A stretch of DNA of 62,610 nucleotides, filler included, from Dugesia japonica (taxonomy: Eukaryota): the NCBI GenBank assembly GCA_001938525.1. It is 5 parts of 5 records of this genome, joined end to end, with 100 filler letters (N's around TTAATTAATTAA, not from the genome) between each part and the next. Parts side by side here need not be neighbours in the genome. Positions count along the whole stretch, not along the records: positions 48,526 to 62,610 come from MQRL01602986.1; 4 more parts are not named here. One strand, given 5' to 3'. The notes under the pieces are model-generated. The model had not been told where the DNA came from, made no database searches, and worked only from the letters and a program-made list of their open reading frames with translations. The translations under genes were made by a program, and so were the position numbers. Positions 48,526 through 62,610 of this stretch are shown here, in pieces. Each line of letters starts with the position of its first letter. Positions within the stretch are counted from its first letter, which is position 1.

Positions 48526-48528
48526 TTA

Positions 48529-48580
<52 letters not shown>

Positions 48581-48595
48581 CATTATTATTATTAT
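48526..48595. repeat. (ATT)n microsatellite
   Basis: Direct reading. Confidence 0.95.
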
Positions 48596-48901
48596 TTTTG
48601 GGTTTTTAAGATTTGTTTATTTCAATGCTCTTAATTTAAACCATCTCTGATTGACATCACTCTTGCTTTCAACCAATTGTCACATAATAAAGGGGCAACC
48701 TAAAAACCATAAGCGTTTGCGTCACCTGTGTGACAAATGGAATTATTCTGATTACGCACNGATTAAATAAATATTATTGCCACTCTACTTATACGATACT
48801 TTTACTGTTTTTGATTTTTGAATACAAAGTTTTTTTGCATAGTAACACCGTTACCATTTCCCACATATAATTTACAGTACTCTACATTTTGGCATCCATT
48901 G

Positions 48902-49417
48902 TCATACATTTCTCTCTTCTCCATACCACATCCTCTCACTAGTCTCGATAGTGTTCAGGATTGTGGATACGCTCGGTAATCGGTTAATTTGGGATAGAAT
49001 AAGTTCTGCATTATAAGTTTGTAACTCTTCTACTTGGTTTCTCAGTTTCTCTATGATTTTGTTAGTTCCGCTCAAGGTTTGTAGGTAGAAATTCTGATTC
49101 TCAGTAATCTGTCGTCTCTGATTCTCCACTATTTTATTCAATCTATGTAACTGCATCACATGGAAATTGTGATTCTCCACAAGGGTTGCATTTATTTGTC
49201 GAGTCTGTTGTAACTGTTCGTTCAATACCTTGGAGTTCATCATTACACCCCGGCAGTGTTCGTCCCATAAATTCTCCATTGCAAAATAAGGATTTAAAGG
49301 TTGATTAAGCAATTGGGTATAAGTTTGTACTGGTTCCTCCACAATTGTTCTGTCGACGTCGTCTAGATCCACATTTACTGGTAACTGCCCATTCATTGTT
49401 ATCCGTTTCTGATCCAT
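48902..49417 (-). CDS. Hypothetical coiled-coil protein (last cargo ORF)
   Basis: Intact 171-aa ATG-initiated ORF with Q/N/L-rich heptads. Confidence 0.65.
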   Translation of the reverse strand: MDQKRITMNGQLPVNVDLDDVDRTIVEEPVQTYTQLLNQPLNPYFAMENLWDEHCRGVMMNSKVLNEQLQQTRQINATLVENHNFHVMQLHRLNKIVENQRRQITENQNFYLQTLSGTNKIIEKLRNQVEELQTYNAELILSQINRLPSVSTILNTIETSERMWYGEERNV

Positions 49418-49589
49418 TTTACTAAATAAATACTACGATAAAAATACTACAGTGATCAATCCCAAAACAAATTTACAAATTACTCCATAATTTAATTACT
49501 TTACATTTCGAGCTACTCAAAAACTAAATTGTGTACCTTACTGTTAAATTTCAGGTAATTTATTTACAACTTTGCTCTCACTAACCTCC

Positions 49590-51360
49590 TCAATAACTCC
49601 ACAAAAACTCAGTTCCTCCCTCAGGAATTCCCGACCGCACCAACTCTCTTGGCGGGTGCAAATATTTCGCTATCAACTCTCTTAATTCTGGTTCCAATCG
49701 CAGTCTCGGATACTGCCCTCGTTTTGCCTTACAAATTAATATTGTTATAATCGTCATCAGAATTATCGTAATGACGCCCGCTACTCTACCACTGAATCCT
49801 GCTGACCAATTCCTTTCATTTTCCATTTTGCTTTGCTTCGTTGTTGCCTCATGCTTCAATCTAGCTTTTGCCGGAAATGTCCTTCGTGAACCGATCCTTA
49901 CCAGCTCTTTCATCAATTTGTCAATAAAATCCTCTTGTTGTCTATTTAAAATATTCGATGGCTTTCTAGTTGATTCACNNNNNNNNNNNNNNNNNNNNNN
50001 NNNNNNNNNNNNNNNNNNNNNNNNNNNNTCTGGTTCCAATCGCAGTCTCGGATACTGCCCTCGTTTTGCCTTACAAATTAATATTGTTATAATCGTCATC
50101 AGAATTATCGTAATGACGCCCGCTACTCTACCACTGAATCCTGCTGACCAATTCCTTTCATTTTCCATTTTGCTTTGCTTCGTTGTTGCCTCATGCNNNN
50201 NNNNNNNNNNNNNNNNNNNNNNNNNNNNNNNNNNNNNNNNNNNNNNNNNNNNNNNNNNNNNNNNNNNNNNNNNNNNNNNNNNNNNNNNNNNNNNNNNNNN
50301 NGGCTTTCTAGTTGATTCACTTTCAGTTGTCGTTTTCACATACCTCGTCATCGCATGGTTTCTCTTTTTGCTTCGTACACTGGTTTCCCCCGTGCTCCTC
50401 TTCATGATAGTTGATGTCGCCGTCGTTGTCGTTTTCGGATACACCATCTTCGTCAACCTCTTTGTTGTTGACTTGACCGTTGTCATCCTCAAGTAAGTTT
50501 TCGTTTTTGGTTTCCCTTTTGTCGTCGGTTCGATGGTTAGTGCCCTATTGCCCTGGGGCGTCTCGTCTACTAATATATATTCTAATTCTAACCATTCCCA
50601 TTTTTTCCGATTAAGTTTCATTATCATTTCGTGTTTATTACGGTTCCATCTATACTCTTGTAACACTCCGTCTTGCGTCCAATATGTGAACGATCGATAT
50701 TGCTTAATCCGAAACAACAATTTCTTTCTACGCGACACTTGGAACGTAACTTCTGCATCTTGGGGTGTCCTTTGATTCTCTTTATCTACTATACTCATTT
50801 TCATATCGATCATAGGCCACTCTCCGCTTCGGAAGGCGAAATGCTGTCCCCATACACCTGATGGAAACTGGTTCCATTGAGTTCCCGTCACACCCCGCGG
50901 TTCGATCTTCCAGACTTGCGAGATTTATCCCGCCCGTTTTCCCCGACATTTATCGTTGAATCCGAGCCAGGCTGGCTCATATCGGTCACGCGTATAATAG
51001 AGCACATGGATATAGTGGTAGTAATAAAACTAAACTCTCTGTGGGCTTCGAATAATCCCGAATCATGGCTGTAGGTAAGAAGTATGTCTTCATCCTCCAC
51101 CACACTCCACGGTCTTGGTTTGTATTGGACAATTCGAACTTGCTGTTTCTTACTACCTTTGATCTTGATGTCTAGAGACCAGGTGAATCTATAAAGGTCT
51201 ATTTTAGTCGATTAATATCTGGTTTTTAGCAGAGGTTCTAAATGTCATGTGTTCCCCATACTTGTCACTGTGACTCTTTCCAAACCTTTCCTTGAGATTG
51301 TTTGCACTTGCGTTTTATAAGTCATATAGATTCGATGTTCCGTATGAATATCCTCGTAAT
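49590..51360 (-). pseudogene. Membrane-protein cargo: beta-rich ectodomain, Thr-rich stalk, TM helix
   Basis: Frames 50888-51360 and 49590-50891. TT-rich stretch followed by VAGVITIILMTIITILIC-KAKR. Confidence 0.6.
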
Positions 51361-53859
51361 CATTACACTCTTCCCACTTGCTACTTTAAACACAATTAGT
51401 AATAATACTGCATACATCCACTTGTTCCATTGATTTGTTAACGGGCTCCCATTTCTCGGCATCTCGGGATCAGGCTGAACCTCCCACTGTAATTGCGCTT
51501 GATTATTCACGGTTATTACTAAGATTACGATTGTCACTGCGAATGCTAATGCCGCTATTACTGCCGTTAACAGTTTCCGATTATCGTTAATCGTCTGGTT
51601 CACTACAATGGTTGGTCCTGCTGACCAATCTCGTTCCATTCCTATCACTTCATATGCGATCAACGCCATTAGCACATATATCCATTTACTCATTAGCTTA
51701 GTTTGTCTATTTGCTCCACTGGACATCATGGATGACTCATTAAACTCATACAATTTTGTCACTTGTACGGTGGTTGGCCATGCTACCGCTGTTAGCATTA
51801 CTAACCAAAAAATAATTATTGATACAGATATCAATGCTAAGCAAGTCCATATTGTCCTCCGACACTTTCTCAGAACGGCCGGCTTGGTTTCATCTTTTAG
51901 ATCTCCCGATTCATTTTCGTAAATATGATCATGTGATTCAGATTTTATCATTGCGTAGACATAATTTCCTTCCGACGTGTTGTTCCCATTCGTGGGTGGT
52001 TCTGGTAGTGGAGTTCCTCTACTCGGTCCTTTAATCGTGGCTTGATCTATCATTAAGTTAGTTTCTCGTTCGATTATTTGATTCATTTTTGCTCCACACT
52101 CATATTGACTTGTTCCAACCTTTCTTTTCTCTTGTTTCTCTTGAATTACTCTAATCTCCTGCATTAACTCAGGTGTGATCGGCATCTCAAACAAGACATT
52201 GCCCTTGAGGTCCATCATTCCAATCACTACTATCTCGTCCTCGACTTTGTCATTATCTTTTGTGTCGCCCTCAGGAATCCCGCAAAAGGTAAACATTTCT
52301 GCTTACGTTAGCGTTTTAGTCTTCGTTTCTGGTTCCGTGGTTCCATGACATTTTTGCAATCGTTTGCACCCTTCTCCTTTCCTCGACTCCTGTTCTCGTT
52401 CTTGTTTGGCTCTACGCTGCAGCGCTTGTAGGTACAATTTTTTCATCGCTTCACTCTCTTCTGCCATCAATGGATGTGGATAAACATCTGCTATTCTCTG
52501 GTACTCGATTACCATATCTTCACTTCTTCTTAATCGCTCTTCGCAAGCTTGTTCGGTAAGCGATTTTCCGTTGTACGATTCTTCAATTTTTAAATATTCC
52601 TCTAGTTTTTTGTAGAGCGCACCGTATTCTCTTTTATACTTTTGTTCATGATACTTCTGGAGTTCTTGATCTGTCAGCCATCTCTCCATCTTATCCCCAT
52701 ACTGTATCGTGGGGAATTTTTTTCCTGGACGTTCTGTACACCATTTGCGTTTTCTCACTTGATAATACGCTTGCATTTCCAACTCTTTCTCTTTAGGTAT
52801 GTCCGTTCCACGACTCAATACTGTTTCTACTGTTAATAATATAGCAGCTTCTATTTCCTTATTTTTCTACTTTCTTTGTCGCTCCTCTTCTGACGTTGGC
52901 CGCTCTCCAGACCTCTTTTTATCATTATCCTCTGATACTTCAGGCTTTCCTTCCTCTTTATGTTTCTGGGCCCATTTTTGATAACATCTTTCACCGTACG
53001 CTTCAATCTTTTCTAACACGGCTGTTGGCACCTCCACCCTATCTTTACAATACGCTCTCATCATGGCTATCGTTGCGGAATTAAATATTTCGTCTTCCTC
53101 AGATTCGACCCTCTGACTATTCTCTGCTTCATACTTCTTTCGTTGTGTTAAAAACTCCTTACATACATCCTCCTTTAGTTTCGTGATTTTTGGTGTATCG
53201 CTCGGTTCTGCATGCAGTGGTCGTCCGCTAAATTCACAATAGTCCCTCATTTTGCTTTTTATCACTTCCTCTAGTGAATCGTAACCATTTTCACCGTTAT
53301 CGTTATCTGAATAAGAATCCATCACTTCCATAGTCGCACTTTGAACTTGCCGTCTGTTATTTTTATTTTTTCTGTTCCTCTTTCTCCGATTTCTACTTTT
53401 ATTCGATGTGCCAGGCAGATTTTTCAGTCTGCTGTTGTTTTCCTGTTGCAGTTACTTCCCTGCTTTTTGTTGAATCTCTTGTTTATCTTTCTCTAATTTC
53501 TCCACCACTTGTTTGAATGCCTGCACCCATTGTAACGCATTTTTCAATTGTTCTACTTCAGGCTCCCTTCGCCCGTCATTTTCTTTTATAAATTGTACCA
53601 TTTCTGCCATCCTTTTGGCTTGCTCCACTTTATATTCCGCATCGTTTAGTCGTCCTTCATACTTTTCTTGACGCTTGCTGTGGGCTTCCCACATAGTTTT
53701 CAATTTTTGTTTATTCTCCTCGGAGATAGTTAATTGAACGTTCTGTCTCTTCAAATTGTAGTCTGTTTTATTGCTCTCTCGCATCTCTTTCATTATTTGT
53801 TTTTTGTCAATTAATTCTTTGTGAATTCTCCGTATTTGCTCATTGAACAACAACTCCAA
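51322..53859 (-). pseudogene. Single reading frame broken by three in-frame stops: coiled coils, charged helical region, four hydrophobic helices
   Basis: ORFs 53452-53859, 52867-53331, 52303-52818 and 51322-52296 share one frame, and the linkers between them translate openly. Confidence 0.75.
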
Positions 53860-55700
53860 TCACTCCCCCCGTTTGAGAAATCGACGTCCTCGTCGATGCC
53901 CTCTGCCTGACTCTTAGTTCTACTCCACCGTTCCTTTGGTGTTATTGGTGTCAACGATTCTCCTTTAACTGGTATGGCTTGGCCTAGCTTTAACCATTTC
54001 CTGGCCTCGTGCAACACATTCATTGCCTCTTGCAATTGACCGCGCATATCGATTGCGCATTTCAAACACATTTCTTTGTATACCACTTCCAGCACGTGCA
54101 ACTCCACTTGAACTTTCTCGTTCACACAACTCACACAATATGCACTGTGCCACACTCCTGTTTCCAGTAACCATTGGCCTCTGCGTTCGACTTGTAATAA
54201 CGACCGTTTATTACTACGCTTCGTATTTCGGTAACATCTTTTACATAACTTCATGATATCCTTCTCAGTGATTGGGCATCTGGTCGGCTTCCATGCTCTA
54301 CATTTATTGCATACCGTCGATTCGATCTCATCGTTTTCCGTTGATGCCGGCTGATCCTTATAGATCCAAAACTCCTCATTCTTTGTAGTAACTATCTGAA
54401 CACCGGTCAGACTTGGTTGGCATAGCGGTCTCCATCCACTCTGAGGAATTAGTCCATTCATGTTATATCGTCCGCATCTTGGATTGTCGCATTTTCGATT
54501 TCCTTTCTTCCAGTCGTCCGTCACTGAAGAATAATATTGATTAAGCATGCCTCGTCTATTTTCATGAATATTTAATTGATCAGTTAATTTAAATTTTTGT
54601 AAGATTTCGTCATGAGTTAATTCTATATCTCGTCTAATAGGATTGGCCACTGTTGATCCTCTCATATGTACATGTAGGCACTCCAATTCATTGTCAATAA
54701 TTCCTTTAGGCAACCATTACACCATTGCTGATATAAATCAGCGTCTACTTTCAGTTTGAATGTTATTTCATTACACTGTTCAAAGGTGGAACTATAGGGT
54801 TCCTTTCTATCTTCTCGTAATGATTCTCGTTGGACACTTTTGTCCATCAATGTTAAGTTATCATAGCTCGATTGTAAACAGTGAAAACATGCTTGGCTCA
54901 TAAGCACTTTATTCAATGGCACTTTATTCAAAGATTTCGTACAGTGGCATATTTTACATCGCAAGACTAGATTCTCCTGATTGCATGTACTCGGATTGAC
55001 ATCTACCGCTTTGATAGCTTTCTCAGCTTTAATACTCCTGCTTAAGATAAACTGATCTTGCTTTTTGCTGGTAACTATTTGAATCACTAACAGACATGGC
55101 TTGCATATCTGCTTTTCCAGATTACGCACACGACCTTCTGGCTCGATGGATTGCCCACATAGTGGATTATTACATGTTCGACTCCCTTGAGTCACTCGTT
55201 CCTTTATAGACGAGTAATATTGTCTCAATATAGCACCGTCATTCTCACAGGTATCTGAATTATTAACTACCTCATATTGTTGTACAATCTCAGTCGGCGC
55301 TGGTTCTATATTCCATCGTACAGGATTTGCAGCTGTCAACACTTTTAAGTGTTTATGTATACACTTAATCTCTGTTGTAGCAATTCTTTGTGCGAAGCTC
55401 AAACAACTTCAGCACCACTGTTGGTATTCACTTGTTACACTTGGTAATTTAATCGATGTCCGACCACATAATTCGCATGATAATTTGTTCATAATAAACT
55501 TTCCTCTCCCTTGTTGGGTAGATTCCCGACTCAAATTCTCCACTAACTCTGCTACATCATCACACATAACCCGCTATCAATGATAACATGCTTTTTCAAT
55601 AAGCTCTTTGTTTAATGGCACCGAATCCGGTTTTGTTGCCACACAGAATATACACCACTTTTCTTGTTTAACACTTTCCTTTTCTTGAATTTCACCCTTA
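53811..55700 (-). pseudogene. Tandem Cys-rich (CxxC) repeat protein region
   Basis: ANP[VI]R..IE...L.QYYSS...G.R.C.NP.CG...C.P.L..[IV]QIVT.K shared by 54662-55402 and 53811-54713. A further partial copy lies at 55400-55660. Confidence 0.75.
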
Positions 55701-55848
55701 GTACTTTTGGTTTTACTGGTCTTCGTATTCATCATCATTATTTGTGTTCTGGATCTAATTGAGTATCAATCTTCCTCATTGATTAACTTCGTTTTGAAAC
55801 TCAGCCGCTTCTTAACTTTTGGTTTGACCTCCTCTTCATTCTCTTCTG

Positions 55849-57306
55849 CTATTGGCTTGTGGCTGCTATTGTTTCTTCCTCGCTACTTTTATCATTAGCT
55901 TCCTTCGTTGCTGCTAATTTACATCTTGATACATGAACAATACTTGGCTTCTTGAGTGGCTTTCCCACTTCCTTTACTTTTAGATTTGTTGCAGTTGTCT
56001 CTAACACTAAATAAGGTCCTTTATTTGGTCGTTTTNNNNNNNNNNNNNNNNNNNNNNNNNNNNNNNNNNNNNNNNNNNNNNNNNNNNNNNNNNNNNNNAA
56101 CGTATGAGGCTTTGTATCTCGATCATACAATTCCTTATAACGCTCTTGATTAAATTACGCATTTAGCGCTGCCAATCTCCATATTTCTTGCATTCTCTCT
56201 TTCATGCCGGTGACGTAATAATCCTTGTCCATGTATTGCGGTATTGGCGGCTGATGCTCTAAATCTATTGGCATATTACATTCTACACCATACATTAATT
56301 TAAAAGTTGACGCTTTTGTCGCGGGATGTTCTCCCATCCGATATGCAAATAAACATAAATTCAAATGTTTGTCCCAATCTCGCTGGGATTTCGTCGCATA
56401 ACTCGATAACATTCTAGTCAATGTCTGATTAAACCGCTCCGTCATTCTATCCGTTTGCGGATGATACGCCGATGTNCGTACTTTATGAATATTAAAATAA
56501 CTAGTCACTTCTTTCATTAATTCACTCATGAAATTCTTTCCTTGATCTGTCAATATCTTTTTCGGTGGGCCATATCGACTGAATAATTTATCTACTAATA
56601 CTCTTGCGATTGTTGACGCTTTTTGATCCTTTAATGCAAATGCCTCGGTAAATTTTGATTAATAATCCACTACTGTCAAGATATACGCTTTTCCACTGTC
56701 CGTTGGCGGGAATGGTCAGATTATATCCATTGCAATTATATCCATTGGTGCCGCTAGCACTGGTATTGGTTGTAACGCAACTTTAAATTTCTTTCCAGTT
56801 CCTTTTGTTGCCTCACAAATCTCGCATTTACTAATCCATTCTCTCACACATGTCGTAATATGAGGCCAATAATATTTTGCTCGTTATTTGGATTCAGTTT
56901 TCTTTGCTGACATATGACCTCCGAGAACTCCATTATGATATTGTTCAAGTATTCTTGCTCTTCTACATTTTGGTATTACCAGTAACAGTTGATCACCTTC
57001 CTTCTTCATTAACCATTCGTTTACCACAGTGTATCTACCACCTCGTTTCTTTAAATGTTTCTTCATCGCCTTGTTACACTCCATTTTACTTAAGTCAAAG
57101 TGAGCTATATATTCTAAGATTATTTTTACTTCCTCGTCTTCGTCCTGATCCTTTTTCAATCCGGTAAAATCTTTATTCTCTGCCAATATCATACATAGAG
57201 ATCGTATGTCTCGATTCATTAATTGTTGTAAGTCTATCCATTCACCTCTGGTTGATTTATTTTCTACCAATTCCTCTGGTTTGTCTGTAAATTTTGCTCT
57301 TGACAT
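55849..57306 (-). pseudogene. Ty3/Gypsy integrase (HHCC, DDE core, GPY domain)
   Basis: YHNGVLGGHM, YWP...C.IC, IAMDII, LTDQGKNF, TSAYHPQ..MTERFNQTL and KGPY; contains stops. Confidence 0.93.
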
Positions 57307-57404
57307 ATAATCTGCATTTGAATTTGCTTTTCCTGTTTTGTATTNNNNNNNNNNNNNNNNNNNNNNNNNNNNNNNNNNNNNNNNNNNNNNNNNNNNNNNN
57401 NNNN

Positions 57405-59220
57405 TTTTGTCCGATCATTGTTATCGGCTGATGATCTGTATAGATTACTAATGGATGTCCAAGTATTAACTGATTAAAGTGTTTTACAATTTTAATTACA
57501 ATGCTCAGTATGTCAACGTTTGGTAATTCGCTTGATTGGATTGTCAGTGATGCCCTCTTTTCTGACAAAGGCGCGAGATATTTGATTTGGCATTTATTCA
57601 ACGAAATCATTATATTTTCAGTTGTCCTTAAATAGAAATGAGGCCAAATTAGTTCGTTATATAAACGCATTCTCCGACTCTCTAACAACGTTATTACCAT
57701 AGTGGTTCCAGGTTTCAGACAGTATTCATAAATATGGGCATTTACATCATTGATGCTAACTACTGACACTGGTGTACAAACAATATATTCACCTATGGGA
57801 TTTGCCCATTCAACCTCCTCCAACGCATTGAGTAAATCCTTTACCGTCGTTCCTTTCAGTTTTAACACCCGTGGGATGTTACACTTGGTCGCCACTGGTA
57901 CTTTCTTCAAAACTTGATCCATCGTAATGTATGCAGTTCTATCCTCATCCGGTCTCCAGGATTCCATTGCTTTGATTTTATAATCCTCCACGGTTGTATT
58001 TCCTAACAACTCTTTCTCATACTCAAGAATTATTGGTCTCCACTTTTGATTGGTTATCAGGTCTATATGTCCTGGCTCCGCTAATTCAACCAAGTGATTC
58101 ATTAATTTCCAATAAGCCTTTCTGGTTAATTCATCTTTCAATAATTTAGCATCCTTTATGACTGTTTCTACATAATCATACACTCTTGTTTTGTATCTAA
58201 TCGGTGCTTTTGATCTCGCTGGATCGCTTTTGGTTATCATACTGATTTGAGCCACGGTATTTTCGGTTTTCGATGCTCCTCTTGTTTTCCGGGTCATTGG
58301 CTGTCTGATCTCCTTTACCACATCCGCCAGAAATCCCTGCTGTAATTTACTTATTCCTTTGGTTGTGGTTGTTGACTCCGTTTGTACTAACACCATGTAC
58401 TTGTGATATTTCTTTTCAAATGATTTTACTATTTGCTCAGTTGTTCTGAAATCAAAATAATACCANNNNNNNNNNNNNNNNNNNNNNNNNNNNNNNNNNN
58501 NNNNNNNNNNNNNNNAATGCGATGCATTTCTACTAAATCTATTAACTTTATTGTTGTTTTACCTGGCCAGACTCCATATTCCGATATATTTGCTTTAGCA
58601 TCACCTTGTTCTATCACTCTGGTTCGAGAACACAAAACATACTCTTTGATCGGCTTTGGCCATGCCAGTTCATTTACTGCTTGTAATAATCCACTTACAG
58701 TAGTATCGTTTAACACAATTTTCCTAGGTATATCTTGATATTTCATTTCAGTTGAATCTTCATCTATGACTCGCTCGTAAGCATTAATACTATAATCATC
58801 GGGTTTCGTGTGACTACGAATTTCCGATTCATAGTCCTGCGCCTGAGGAAACCACACTTCACTGGTGTACACATCTAATTCACCTGACTCCATTAACTCC
58901 AACACATGATTCATCATTGCCCAGTATTCTTCTTGGTAAACTACTGTCTTGAATGTTTGAATCATTGTAACTTTATCCTCCACTTGTCTCGTTATCACCG
59001 CTCTTTTTGCTGTTAATTGTGCTGGTAGTTCTACCTCCATTGGCTGAGCTTTCATGATATTTATTCGTCCTTGATTATTCTCTCGCTTTTGCATTCTCTC
59101 TCTAGCTACTTGTTGTTCTTCTAATTGCAACTGTAGATACTCCTGCTCTTGTTTCAATTTCTCAAATACTCGTTGCTCAGTTTCATCTTGCCTACGCCTA
59201 TCTTGTTGCATTAGATTCAC
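57405..59220 (-). CDS. Coiled coil + two tandem novel domains (ubiquitin/UBX-like C-half) fused to an RNase H C-terminal remnant
   Basis: Internal duplication YWxxMNHxxELxExG...IPR...TTVxxLLxAxxExxWxxPIxEYxxC...DxxAxIxEYxxxPGxT, then IVKHFNQLILGHPLVIYTDHQP. Confidence 0.7.
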
Positions 59221-59316
59221 TTGTTGTTGATTTTGGTTTCGATTATTTTTATCTGGTCCCTTAATTTATCGTTTTTGTCCATCATTTTCCCAATGGCCTG
59301 ATTGTTTCTCGATTTA

Positions 59317-60830
59317 TTATTGTAATTTGTATTCCCATATTTGTATTCCCAATTTGGGATTCCCATAGCCCGATCTTTGATTATTCTGGAAACAGTTCCT
59401 ACTCGCGTGACCTGGTTTATTGCATGTATAACACATGAGTGATTTTGTGATGAAGCAGTTCTCTGCTTTATGTCCTTGTTTCTGACAATTTGTACATATC
59501 ATTGCTGATCTGCAATCACTGGCATAGTGACCGAGTTTACCACAGTTATAGCAGGTAATTCCCTGTGGTTGCTGCAACGCTCCTTGTCTATTACCTCCAT
59601 TTGATCTTGTATTATTATTTGATTGTCGCGGTGGGGGTCTACTCTGACCTNNNNNNNNNNNNNNNNNNNNNNNNNNNNNNNNNNNNNNNNNNNNNNNNNN
59701 GGTCTACTCTGACCTGGTGACAGCCCTCTCAATAATGGTTGAGTTCTGGCAGGTATAAAATCTGCAATTTTCGGCTCGCTTTTCTTTTCCTCTTTTCGCT
59801 TTTCAATTTTAAAAACACTTACTTGCTTTTGATTCATTTCCACTTTATGTGCTACCATCGCCGCGTTTATTGCCATATCCACCGTTGTTGGTTGAGATAG
59901 ATTTACCCATTTTTTCACTTCTGCATTTCTAAGTCCTTTGATAAAAATACCGAGCACCGTTGGATCATCCAACTTATCTTTCATCACCAATTTGCCGAGT
60001 TTACGTAATTTTGTTGCGTATGCCTGAAAAGTTTCATTTCTTAGTTGTCTTCGACCAACGAACTCTTGAATCTCTTGTCCCTGCAACATTAATGGTTTGA
60101 AATTTTCTAATAATCCTTCCTTAGCTTTTCCCCAGGTATCAACGGGTTCTTTACAATTATTAATTTTATCCAAGTAAATAGTTTTAGCGGAATCCTTTAA
60201 AAATAGAGGTAATCGATCTGCTGGTCTCTTGTCACTCCATTGAAAGGTTTGTACATGTATCCCATATGCCGCAATAAAATCATTTAATTTCTCCGGTTGT
60301 CCGTTAAAATAATCTCCATTAAACTCCATTTTCCATTCCGAACTCCGTTTCGATTTCTGTTCACTTGTACTCTTGTCCTCGTCTGACGATTTCGAATTCT
60401 CCTCGTTGTCTTTTTCTTTACCGGGGGTTGACATGGTATCAGTATCACTTGATTCCGAACTTGATTCCGAATATTGTCGAATTCTACTTGACGCTCTTGT
60501 CGTAGGTATACTATCAGTAACTGATCTAGATTTGTAAAAACTTTCCAGATCAAGGTCTTCTACCGAATTGGCTCTTGAGTAATTTNGTTCNGTTATGNTA
60601 TCAAATTCTCCTTGTACGTCGTCGTTAGACGGGAACGAATTGGGTGATTTGGATGCTGAAATTGATAGAGATTGGTTGAATTGTCGAGACGGTCTATTGT
60701 AGGAGACCGATCGCTTTATTTTAGCTGAATTGGGTCGTTTAACTACAAATGACCTTCTATGTTCGGTACTTTCTCTAAAATTGTAGCGGGGTTCTTGATT
60801 ATCTATGATTGCTTATTTGCTTGGTTCATA
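59317..60830 (-). CDS. Gag with capsid-like domain and three CCHC zinc knuckles
   Basis: FNGQPE...LKDSAKTIY...RRQLRNETFQAYATKL...FIKGL; CYNCGKLGHYASDC, CTNCQKQGHKAENC, CYTCNKPGHASRNC. A Ser-rich N-terminal extension reads upstream of 60434. Confidence 0.92.
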
Positions 60831-61350
60831 GATTGATTGGTTTATCTCGAATTTTGGAATATTGGAATATTTTGGTTTCTGAAAATAAATAAGATGGCCC
60901 TACGGCTTCTGNACGCATTCAAATAGTATTATCGCATTNGTTAATTGACTACTTTTAACTACTTTTAACTACCAATTGATACTCCTAATAACCAATTACT
61001 ACACTACGAAACATTATCATACTTGATTTCTATCACTTTAGCAGCACATTTACGTAATTTACTTTTATTACTCATTAATTTATTATACATAAGCAGCAAT
61101 TTTATTTGTTTATGTCTATTGAAATACCCACTTCAATATTTACTGTTCTAGGACAGTTCCACTCAGATTAGTAATTCCAATTATAATTTTTATAGTTTAC
61201 AACTTACAACACTCATATACTTAATTGTCTGGTAATTTTCAGATGTGCCTTTGACACATTACTCCAATAAACTCCATCAATTCATTTCATCTACTTGTAA
61301 CTGATTTCTCCTTTATTCCGTAATGCATTTTTTTTCTTTCACTGCTGATA

Positions 61351-62085
61351 GAAAATTTCCGCCTGCTCCTGGCAAACCTTTTCAATGAAAGCTCTTTAAT
61401 TTACTGAAAGCCTCAAATATTTCACCATAAAATTTGCTTAAATCCTTAATTTCACTTTTACCCAACATTTCGCATTGAAACATTTCCGCCTGTTCATGGC
61501 AATTTGTCTTCCTGTCAAATTTTCTTAATTGATCAATACCCACTTTATCTCCATCTCATTTTCCTTAACGGAACAATCCAGCCTGTCCCTGGCAATTTAT
61601 CTTCCAAATAACTTTTATACTAATTGATGATTAATTCATTCCGACTTCATATCTCATGTTGGGACAAACCCACCTGCCCTGGTAGTTTATCCTCCGGATA
61701 AACTTTTAATATCAATTAACACTTCTTTTGTTTCAACTCCTTTTTGACATGGAAACATTCCCGCCTGTTCCTGGCAGTTTATACCCCTGATAAACTTTTA
61801 TTATCCCTTTACATTTGCTGCATCCTAACTTTATTTTCACATGGGTACAATTTCGCCTGTCCTGGCAGTTTATACCCTTGATAAACTTTCACAACTAATC
61901 AATGATTCGATTATCTTCCTTTAACTTGTCCATTCATAGAACTATTTACTCAATTTTTCCACGATTCATTTCGCTTTAACTCATCTCAATATCTAATTTG
62001 TCGGTTATACCTCTCCCTTCATCACTTCACATTAGTACTCCTCAATATCTACAATGGAACTCTTGCGCCGATCCCTGGAAAATTT
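61351..62085. repeat. Array of ~7 units with a conserved GCCTGTYCCTGGCARTTTAT core
   Basis: Cores at 61361, 61488, 61581, 61672, 61763, 61855 and a degenerate one at 62067. Confidence 0.85.
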
Positions 62086-62610
62086 CCTTGTGAAATTTTA
62101 TAAGTTCAAAGTTCTGCCTGCATAATAATTATCAATAAACCTCTCCCCAACTTATTTATTTTAACCACACACTCGGGCAGTTTTCATTACTTCTCCAAAC
62201 TTAACTATACCCTCGGATAGTTTTATTATTTCTCTCACTTAAACTATACGCTTAGATAGTTTTATTATTTCCGACCAGATCTTCCTTAGTACTCTTCTCG
62301 GTGGCCAACCGACAAAGTATCCGGAACGAATTACTGGTAATTAACTCACTACTCCAATATTTGTTTCAATATCTTTCATTTAGTTCTGTTATCATTTTCC
62401 TCCAAAAAATTTCAATCTTTTTCATACTAGTTTATTTGCTTTGAACACTCTCTCTATACAGCCGGTAGTCTATTTTTTCAGCTCCAGCTGGGCGACAATT
62501 TCGATCCTCAACTAACAATAATGCTTTAATCTCTCACTACTTGAGTCAGTTGACAGTCTATTTCGATTCAGCTCCAACCGCTCGCTAATGTGAAGGTTCT
62601 CAGTCAGGAT

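What the first reader, a model, noticed from the sequence alone, without database searches (positions are those of the whole stretch)
57405..59580. Gag-integrase retroelement in which protease and reverse transcriptase are replaced by two tandem ubiquitin/UBX-like domains
Seen: between the Gag zinc knuckles and integrase there is no D[ST]G protease and no YxDD RT. Instead there is a coiled coil, then two diverged copies of a ~150-aa domain, in frame with only the C-terminal half of RNase H (KHF...YTDHQP). The one gap between the copies (50 N) matches the ~16 aa expected from the other copy, so RT is unlikely to be hidden there. Inference: the C-half of each copy (IPRVLKLKGTTVKDLLNALEE...EYIVCTPVSVVSINDVNAHIYEYCLKPGTTMVI) follows the beta-grasp pattern of UBX/ubiquitin-like domains. 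The copies are strongly diverged yet open, implying the RT-less architecture evolved under selection rather than being a fresh deletion. This suggests a non-autonomous element that keeps its own capsid and integrase, borrows RT, and may engage the host ubiquitin/p97 system.
Basis: partly seen in the sequence, partly recalled or inferred. Interest (0 to 1): 0.9.

Follow-up and report, generated by a model that had tools for sequence, protein, structure and literature searches.

The report
Gypsy-like retroelement copy without protease and RT
A decayed copy of a gypsy-type retroelement keeps its capsid and integrase genes, but where protease and reverse transcriptase should be it carries two old, diverged copies of a protein module with no known relatives, and nothing shows that this module is ubiquitin-like.

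Summary
The core observation holds. On the minus strand lie gag with three CCHC knuckles, then about 590 open codons, then integrase. No protease or reverse transcriptase signal occurs anywhere in the 14-kb piece.

The open stretch holds two copies of a roughly 200-residue domain X (33% identity, E 2e-29).

Three details change:
- The repeat unit is about 270 residues, because it also takes in the start of the RNase H-like domain.
- That domain is full length but diverged. An Asp invariant in relatives is Thr in copy 2, and copy 1 has Thr at the matching place.
In the other frame the flanks line up with the uninterrupted second copy, with about 7 residues missing. RT is therefore very unlikely to hide there.

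X diverged under protein-level constraint: third codon positions are saturated, first and second are not.

The ubiquitin/UBX call has no support. Pfam finds nothing, the AlphaFold models are poor, and Foldseek gives only noise.

No relative of X exists in 1.84 billion protein representatives or in the contig collections, so no sibling copies could be examined.

This copy carries in-frame stops in integrase. Best reading: a partly coding, probably non-autonomous Ty3/gypsy derivative. Moderate interest.

The parts
60435..62610 (-). 5' flank of gag up to the edge of the piece. No long ORF. It may hold LTR or leader sequence, but no LTR can be delimited.
   Evidence: No ORF of 60 aa or more apart from short ones. 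It holds a 91-nt direct repeat pair and a 39-nt x2.8 array. It has no repeat partner elsewhere in the piece.
59317..60434 (-). gag: a capsid-like domain followed by three CCHC zinc knuckles. It contains the assembly gap 59651-59700, across which the frame as written changes.
   Evidence: Retrotrans_gag E 5.7e-9. zf-CCHC three stretches, E 7.5e-17. There are no stops on either side of the gap in the respective frames.
59092..59220 (-).
   Evidence: 60% E/Q/R/K/D over the first 60 residues. No Pfam family. Coiled coil not tested.
58516..59091 (-). Domain X, copy 1 (192 residues up to the gap).
   Evidence: Aligns with copy 2: 33% identity over 207 aa, E 2e-29 (alignment A1).
58466..58515 (.). 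Assembly gap (50 N) inside repeat unit 1.
   Evidence: Its flanks map to residues 243 and 251 of the uninterrupted copy 2, so about 7 residues are missing.
58298..58465 (-). Partial duplicate (56 residues) of the N-terminal part of the RNase H-like domain. It is read in the frame of the second ORF and runs open into copy 2.
   Evidence: BLASTP against the stretch after copy 2: 30% over 56 aa, E 2e-6. No stop from gap to gap, 353 codons.
57668..58273 (-). Domain X, copy 2 (202 residues).
   Evidence: No family in Pfam, NCBIfam or PHROGs. No similarity to the RT-RNase H family by hhalign (P 0.16-0.28).
57280..57646 (-). RNase H-like domain, full length but diverged. It contains the assembly gap 57345-57404. 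The Asp that is invariant in relatives is Thr here.
   Evidence: Pfam RT_RNaseH E 2.5e-4, below the cut-off, profile 57-85 only. hhalign against 47 relatives: P 2e-4, 73 columns spanning the whole domain. Conserved-column table. Gap flanks are collinear with relatives: about 23 residues missing against 20 codons of N.
55852..56976 (-). Integrase (zinc-binding H2C2 domain, catalytic core, C-terminal domain). It is broken by four in-frame stops, has no frameshift, and contains the assembly gap 56036-56098.
   Evidence: Integrase_H2C2 E 1.5e-4. The core is 49% identical to rve-bearing proteins, best E 4e-36. Weak MLVIN_C and Integrase_p58_C matches in the tail. Stop count.
53811..55765 (-). Neighbour downstream of integrase: cysteine-rich modules, themselves an old tandem duplication.
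   Evidence: 36% identity over 117 aa, E 7e-23. A further short match. No Pfam family.
48902..53859 (-). Further same-strand orphan ORFs: charged helical ORFs, a multi-pass membrane ORF (51322-52296), and a Thr/Ser-rich single-pass membrane ORF (49590-50891). Whether they belong to the element is unknown.
   Evidence: ORF list and translations. No Pfam family. The same strand-composition bias holds throughout.

Best explanation
This is one decayed copy of a Ty3/gypsy-derived retroelement whose pol region has no protease and no reverse transcriptase.

Behind gag and the zinc knuckles it encodes, in order: a charged stretch, [domain X + start of an RNase H-like domain], [domain X + a complete RNase H-like domain], and integrase.

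- The layout arose by an internal tandem duplication of a roughly 270-residue unit.
- The two units then diverged for a long time while the amino-acid sequence stayed under constraint.
- The RNase H-like domain lacks an Asp that is invariant in relatives. It is therefore probably not an active nuclease, and probably was not one before the duplication either.
- Inferred, not shown: such an element cannot copy itself. If it ever spread, it depended on protease and RT from an autonomous relative while supplying its own capsid and integrase.
- The function of X is unknown. My best guess is a structural or binding module N-terminal to integrase.
For: - Domain order and absence of PR/RT.
- Repeat.
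- Both gaps in the pol region are collinear, one with the paralogue and one with relatives.
- The junctions from the knuckles to X1 and from X2 to RNase H lie in uninterrupted sequence.
- Codon-position identity between the copies is 0.535 / 0.594 / 0.332, against a chance level of 0.29. Positions 1+2 versus 3 give P 1.9e-7. pN is 0.445 and pS is 0.775, which is saturated.
- 235 + 353 codons are open, where composition predicts one stop per 13 codons.
- The Asp column is 100% Asp in 46 relatives and is Thr here. Copy 1 has Thr at the matching place.
- The closest integrase relative (49%) sits in an ordinary gag-PR-RT-RH-IN element. The integrase is therefore of the Ty3/gypsy kind and the missing part is a loss.
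- Partly coding non-autonomous Ty3/gypsy elements are known, for example RLG_Quinta with GAG plus a domain of unknown function (PMC11302176).
Against: - Only one copy is seen. There are no LTR pair, PBS, target-site duplication or partner element.
- No relative of X was found in any collection.
- This copy has four in-frame stops in integrase and three in the short spacer between the knuckles and the X frame. It is not functional as it stands.
- The selection signal proves constraint on X, not on the absence of PR-RT.
- The RNase H assignment rests on sub-threshold matches plus position.
Confidence: 0.5

Rival explanations
1. Private, fairly recent deletion. The family is autonomous and carries PR-RT (and an active RNase H) between the knuckles and the X frame, with the X/RNase H-like repeats as extra domains ahead of integrase. 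This single copy lost PR-RT by deletion.
For: - The short spacer between the knuckles and the X frame holds three in-frame stops and could be a deletion scar.
- This copy is decayed elsewhere too, with four stops in integrase.
- The constraint seen between X1 and X2 is equally expected in this case.
Against: - It needs a family with about 590 extra residues and a second, dead RNase H-like domain between RT and integrase. No such family was found.
- The Thr in place of the invariant Asp is present at the matching place in both repeat units. This fits long-standing loss of enzyme function.
Confidence: 0.22
2. Assembly artefact. PR-RT lies in an under-sized gap, or the scaffold joins two different elements at a gap.
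For: - The piece has six N runs of 50 bases or more.
- One of them, 49979-50028, is flanked by a perfect 168-nt duplicate, a sign of imperfect gap handling.
- The frames as written differ across the gaps.
Against: - The flanks of gap 58466-58515 map about 7 residues apart on the uninterrupted paralogue.
- The flanks of gap 57345-57404 map about 23 residues apart on relatives, against 20 codons of N.
- Both unusual junctions, from the knuckles to X and from X to RNase H, lie in uninterrupted sequence.
Confidence: 0.07
3. X is the worn-down remnant of RT, or of PR plus RT, in a dead element rather than a different domain.
For: - X stands where the RT thumb would stand, directly before RNase H.
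- The span from the knuckles to RNase H (about 530 residues) is close to the length of a normal PR-RT.
Against: - hhalign of X1, X2 and their alignment against 47 RT-RNase H relatives gives P 0.16-0.28, probability under 0.5%.
- hmmsearch with all filters off finds nothing.
- There are no motifs.
- The codon pattern shows constraint, not decay.
- The span is made of a repeat.
Confidence: 0.06
4. A host gene derived from a retroelement (gag or RNase H-integrase domestication), here as a pseudogene.
For: - There is protein-level constraint on X.
- Host genes that keep RNase H and integrase of retroelement origin are known (from my own knowledge: NYNRIN/CGIN1, GIN1).
Against: - In-frame stops are present.
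- No orthologue exists in 1.84 billion protein representatives.
- gag with knuckles, and an A-rich coding strand along the whole piece, look like an element.
Confidence: 0.05
5. One reading: the C-halves of X are ubiquitin/UBX-like beta-grasp domains that engage the host ubiquitin/p97 system.
For: Only noise-level Foldseek matches to beta-grasp proteins: sacsin Ubl (E 1.2), ThiS, SAMP1, TGS, staphylokinase. They come from low-confidence models.
Against: - No ubiquitin-type Pfam family even at E <= 10.
- No PDB sequence match.
- Model confidence is too low to read a fold.
- The same hit lists hold unrelated folds with equal scores.
- The predicted helix follows the first candidate strand after three residues, leaving no obvious first hairpin.
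Confidence: 0.08

Closest known systems
Ty3/gypsy (Metaviridae) LTR retrotransposons of the 17.6/297/errantivirus kind, for example the element in locus L001
   Same: - gag with CCHC knuckles.
- RNase H-like domain directly before an H2C2-rve integrase.
- Integrase core 49% identical.
   Different: - No protease and no RT. A duplicated orphan module stands in their place.
- The RNase H-like domain lacks the invariant Asp.
- No LTRs are seen in the piece.
Partly coding non-autonomous Ty3/gypsy elements of grasses: RLG_Quinta (GAG plus a domain of unknown function) and RLG_Sabrina (PMC11302176)
   Same: A gypsy derivative that keeps gag, carries a domain of unknown function, and lacks RT.
   Different: - Those elements also lack integrase, and are shown to be multi-copy with LTR ends and a PBS shared with a partner.
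- Here integrase and an RNase H-like domain are kept, and neither copies nor a partner are known.
Degenerate RNase H ('connection' or tether) of vertebrate retroviruses, and dual-RNase H Ty3/gypsy lineages (my own knowledge; not checked in a paper here)
   Same: A duplicated RNase H-like module, with copies that have lost catalytic residues but persist as structural parts of pol.
   Different: Those elements keep RT and one active RNase H. Here neither is present.
Host genes that retain retroelement RNase H and integrase (NYNRIN/CGIN1, GIN1; my own knowledge)
   Same: RNase H-integrase is kept without RT and joined to unrelated N-terminal domains.
   Different: Those are single intact conserved genes without gag. 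This locus has gag, in-frame stops and no orthologues.
Ubiquitin-like / UBX beta-grasp domains
   Same: Nothing demonstrable. There is only an alpha/beta C-half of suitable size.
   Different: No family match, and no confident fold.

Membership tests
Ty3/gypsy LTR retrotransposon | gag with capsid-like domain and CCHC knuckles | tested here: met
   Retrotrans_gag E 5.7e-9. Three zf-CCHC, E 7.5e-17.
Ty3/gypsy LTR retrotransposon | Aspartic protease | tested here: not met
   No Pfam protease family. No D[ST]G in the pol frames. phmmer with a relative's protease-bearing product finds nothing.
Ty3/gypsy LTR retrotransposon | Reverse transcriptase | tested here: not met
   No RVT family. A profile of 47 relatives over all six frames with filters off gives no RT hit. 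No Y.DD anywhere in the piece.
Ty3/gypsy LTR retrotransposon | RNase H with catalytic residues | tested here: inconclusive
   The domain is present by position and by sub-threshold matches (Pfam 21.6 bits against a cut-off of 24.8; hhalign P 2e-4). The invariant Asp is Thr. A Glu and the T-D-H columns are kept.
Ty3/gypsy LTR retrotransposon | Integrase (H2C2, rve core, C-terminal domain) after RNase H | tested here: met
   It is broken by four in-frame stops.
Ty3/gypsy LTR retrotransposon | Pair of long terminal repeats, PBS/PPT, target-site duplication | tested here: inconclusive
   No direct repeat pair in the 14-kb piece. The element may run past one or both edges.
Non-autonomous, partly coding LTR retrotransposon (Quinta/Sabrina type) | Lacks RT but keeps some coding capacity | tested here: met
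Non-autonomous, partly coding LTR retrotransposon (Quinta/Sabrina type) | Multiple copies sharing the same internal structure | not testable with these tools
   The host genome is not in reach. No relative was found in the protein or contig collections.
Non-autonomous, partly coding LTR retrotransposon (Quinta/Sabrina type) | LTR ends and PBS shared with an autonomous partner | not testable with these tools
   No LTR was delimited and no partner is known.
Ubiquitin-like / UBX domain | Match to a ubiquitin-superfamily sequence family | tested here: not met
   Pfam at E <= 10 on both copies and both C-halves gives none. PDB sequences give none.
Ubiquitin-like / UBX domain | Beta-grasp fold | tested here: inconclusive
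   AlphaFold2 pLDDT 36.9 (whole X) and 51.8 (C-half). The best Foldseek E-values are 1.2 and 1.8.
Domesticated retroelement-derived host gene | Intact reading frame and orthologues in other genomes | tested here: not met
   In-frame stops are present. There are zero homologues of X.

The most novel reading that the evidence does not exclude
X plus the dead RNase H-like domain is a new protein module that was kept by selection. It took the place of protease and RT in a lineage of retroelements that make their own capsid and integrase and rely on a partner for the rest. That would be a 'capsid-and-integrase-only' parasite of other retroelements, with X serving for example to dock onto the partner's machinery or to guide integrase.
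Probability: 0.3. Interest if true: 0.7.

Novelty: new variant of a known kind. Interest (0 to 1): 0.45.

Why it matters
Non-autonomous LTR elements are usually empty (LARD, TRIM) or keep gag only. A lineage that keeps gag and integrase, drops protease and RT, and maintains a new duplicated domain under selection would show a different division of labour between parasitic and autonomous retroelements. It would also add an orphan domain family next to integrase. With a single decayed copy and no relatives in reach, this remains a lead, not a result.

Tried and rejected
- Homologues of X. The profile of both copies found 0 hits in 1.84 billion representatives. PDB sequences gave only noise. IMG/VR and JGI metagenome scans found no relative. 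Pfam, NCBIfam and PHROGs found nothing.
- Homologues of gag in the allowed length range: none.
- Exact look-up of a neighbouring ORF to reach the source contig: not on record.
- Structure. Two AlphaFold2 runs were both of low confidence. Two Foldseek runs had no match below E = 1.
- X as a diverged RT: rejected by hhalign and hmmsearch.
- LTRs or terminal inverted repeats in the piece: none.
- Rfam and tRNA scans: nothing.
- RNase H-like stretch against PDB sequences: nothing.
- Literature. No description was found of a gag + integrase element without PR and RT. The nearest is Quinta/Sabrina.
- Not done: I did not read the protein across the gaps or across frames. Each stretch was searched apart.
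Full report
**Scope**

Only 48526-62610 is genome; everything else in the window is N or linker. The feature lies on the minus strand. The piece contains six N runs of 50 bases or more.

**What is there**

Reading the minus strand from high to low coordinates:
- gag. A capsid-like domain (Retrotrans_gag, E 5.7e-9) and three CCHC zinc knuckles (E 7.5e-17).
- Two long open frames, 59220..58429 and 58396..57257, with no Pfam family except a sub-threshold 30-residue match to the RNase H domain of retroelement pol proteins near the end of the second.
- Integrase. A zinc-binding H2C2 domain (E 1.5e-4). A catalytic core that is 49% identical to many rve-bearing proteins (best E 4e-36). A C-terminal domain with weak matches.

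**No protease or reverse transcriptase in the piece**

- No Pfam protease or RVT family is found in any ORF of 80 aa or more.
- A profile built from 47 RT-RNase H proteins of relatives was run with all speed filters off against all 435 six-frame segments of 20 aa or more. It finds only the RNase H core (E 0.017).
- The protease-bearing product of the closest relative finds nothing.

**The repeat**

- The two open frames share a domain, here called X: 33% identity over 207 residues, E 2e-29 (alignment A1). At the DNA level the copies no longer match.
The 64 residues after the gap at 58466-58515, read in the frame of the second ORF, align with the stretch that follows X copy 2: 30% over 56 residues, E 2e-6.
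- The unit is therefore about 270 residues: X plus the first part of the RNase H-like domain.
- The layout is: charged stretch - [X1 - partial RNase H-like] - [X2 - complete RNase H-like] - integrase.

**The gaps, tested first**

- Gap 58466-58515. The last residue before the gap corresponds to residue 243 of the second ORF, and the first residue after it to residue 251. About 7 residues are missing. The two sides are collinear with an uninterrupted paralogue.
In the paralogy-supported frame there is no stop from this gap to the next (353 codons). The two 'ORFs' are therefore most likely one.
- As written (50 N) the two sides are not in frame. That says nothing, since the length is an estimate.
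- Gap 57345-57404. Against the family alignment, the residues before the gap end at column 318 of P0122 and those after it begin at column 343. That is about 23 residues missing against 20 codons of N.
- Gap 59651-59700 lies inside gag. The frame of the knuckles is open from the gap onward, but I have no relative with which to test collinearity.
- Hidden PR-RT in the pol gaps is thus very unlikely. Both unusual junctions, from the knuckles to X1 and from X2 to RNase H, lie in uninterrupted sequence.

**The RNase H-like domain**

- Pfam sees only profile positions 57-85 of 105.
- hhalign against the 47 relatives gives P 2e-4 with a confident core of 27 columns. A greedy alignment of 73 columns starts at the very beginning of the domain.
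- In that alignment many strongly conserved columns are matched in the N-half. The column that is Asp in all 46 relatives is Thr here. A conserved Glu and the Thr-Asp-His columns are kept.
- Copy 1 has Thr at the matching place.
- So the domain is full length, diverged, and probably not an active nuclease. By parsimony the change is older than the duplication. This last step is inference, and the N-half alignment is of low confidence.

**Has X been under selection?**

- Across 187 aligned codons, identity is 0.535, 0.594 and 0.332 at codon positions 1, 2 and 3, with chance at 0.29. Positions 1+2 against 3 give P 1.9e-7.
- pN is 0.445. pS is 0.775, which is saturated.
- The frames are open over 235 and 353 codons, where base composition predicts a stop every 13 codons.
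- X therefore diverged as a protein under constraint.
- This does not prove that the absence of PR-RT was selected. The same pattern would arise if X were an extra domain of an autonomous family.

**What is X?**

It is unknown.
- There is no hit for the two-copy profile among 1.84 billion protein representatives.
- Searches of PDB sequences, Pfam at E <= 10, NCBIfam and PHROGs also give nothing meaningful.
- There is no similarity to RT: hhalign P 0.16-0.28.
- AlphaFold2 on the two-sequence alignment gives pLDDT 36.9 for the whole domain and 51.8 for the C-half.
- Foldseek against the PDB gives best E-values of 1.2 and 1.8. A few beta-grasp proteins appear (sacsin Ubl, ThiS, SAMP1, TGS, staphylokinase), but at the same noise level as MIT domains, ferritin and HIV RT.
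- The ubiquitin/UBX reading is therefore unsupported, though a beta-grasp is not excluded.

**State of this copy (counts only)**

- Integrase has four in-frame stops and no frameshift.
- The short spacer between the knuckles and the X frame has three in-frame stops.
- gag and the X/RNase H-like region have none.
- If the four integrase stops had fallen at random over integrase plus the X region, all four would land in integrase with probability 0.044. This is only weak evidence.

**Relatives and context**

- The closest integrase (P0001, 49%) lies in locus L001. That is an ordinary element with gag, protease, RT, RNase H, integrase with chromodomain, and a Baculo_F-type envelope gene. Only the knuckles and integrase of the window match it.
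- No LTR pair, inverted repeat, tRNA or Rfam family is present in the piece. The ends of the element are not defined.
- No sibling copy could be found in any collection.

**Comparison with what is known**

- It works most like the partly coding non-autonomous Ty3/gypsy elements. One example is RLG_Quinta, which encodes GAG plus a domain of unknown function and is moved by RLG_Cereba (PMC11302176).
- It differs in keeping integrase and an RNase H-like domain.
- The criteria that define such a pair could not be tested: many copies, and shared LTR ends and PBS.
- As a Ty3/gypsy element it fails two defining features that were tested, protease and RT.

**Verdict**

- The ubiquitin-like interpretation is not supported.
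- The 'borrows RT' model is plausible but rests on one decayed copy.
- Best explanation: an RT-less family architecture (0.5). The main rival is a private deletion from an autonomous family (0.22).

- They were used as a lead only and are replaced here.
- In my reasoning I also noted the places of a few stops.
- Scripts labelled stop-to-stop segments by their coordinates, which shows where some stops lie.
Alignments and profiles of relatives were used only for scores and column shares.

Noticed in passing
window 49687-49854 and 50029-50196 (flanking gap 49979-50028): A perfect 168-nt direct repeat sits on both sides of an assembly gap. It duplicates the transmembrane and tail part of the ORF 49590-50891. 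This looks like a gap-closure artefact, not biology.
   Followed up: partly
window 53811-55765, minus strand: A second old tandem duplication lies just downstream of integrase. Two cysteine-rich modules share 36% identity over 117 aa (E 7e-23), and there is a further short partial match upstream. No Pfam family.
   Followed up: partly
window 48902-53859, minus strand: A run of same-strand orphan ORFs: charged helical ORFs, a multi-pass membrane ORF (51322-52296), and a Thr/Ser-rich single-pass membrane ORF (49590-50891). They might be envelope or accessory genes of the same element, or host genes. No family match.
   Followed up: partly
window 48526-62610: The coding (minus) strand is A-rich and G over C along the whole piece, with no break at the end of integrase (39% A in the X region). 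This fits a single long transcription unit or element.
   Followed up: no
window 61678-61860 and 62161-62271: Upstream of gag there is a 91-nt direct repeat pair (71-77% identity) and a 39-nt array of 2.8 copies. There is also a TTA microsatellite at the low edge of the piece, 48526-48596.
   Followed up: no
L001:9762-11930: The element holding the closest integrase relative carries a Baculo_F-type envelope gene after a chromodomain-bearing integrase. It is therefore an errantivirus-like Ty3/gypsy element with a normal pol.
   Followed up: no
window 59499-59577: The gag ORF as written and the knuckle ORF overlap in different frames just downstream of the gap 59651-59700. The knuckle frame is open from the gap onward, so the apparent frame change may only reflect the estimated gap length.
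   Followed up: partly
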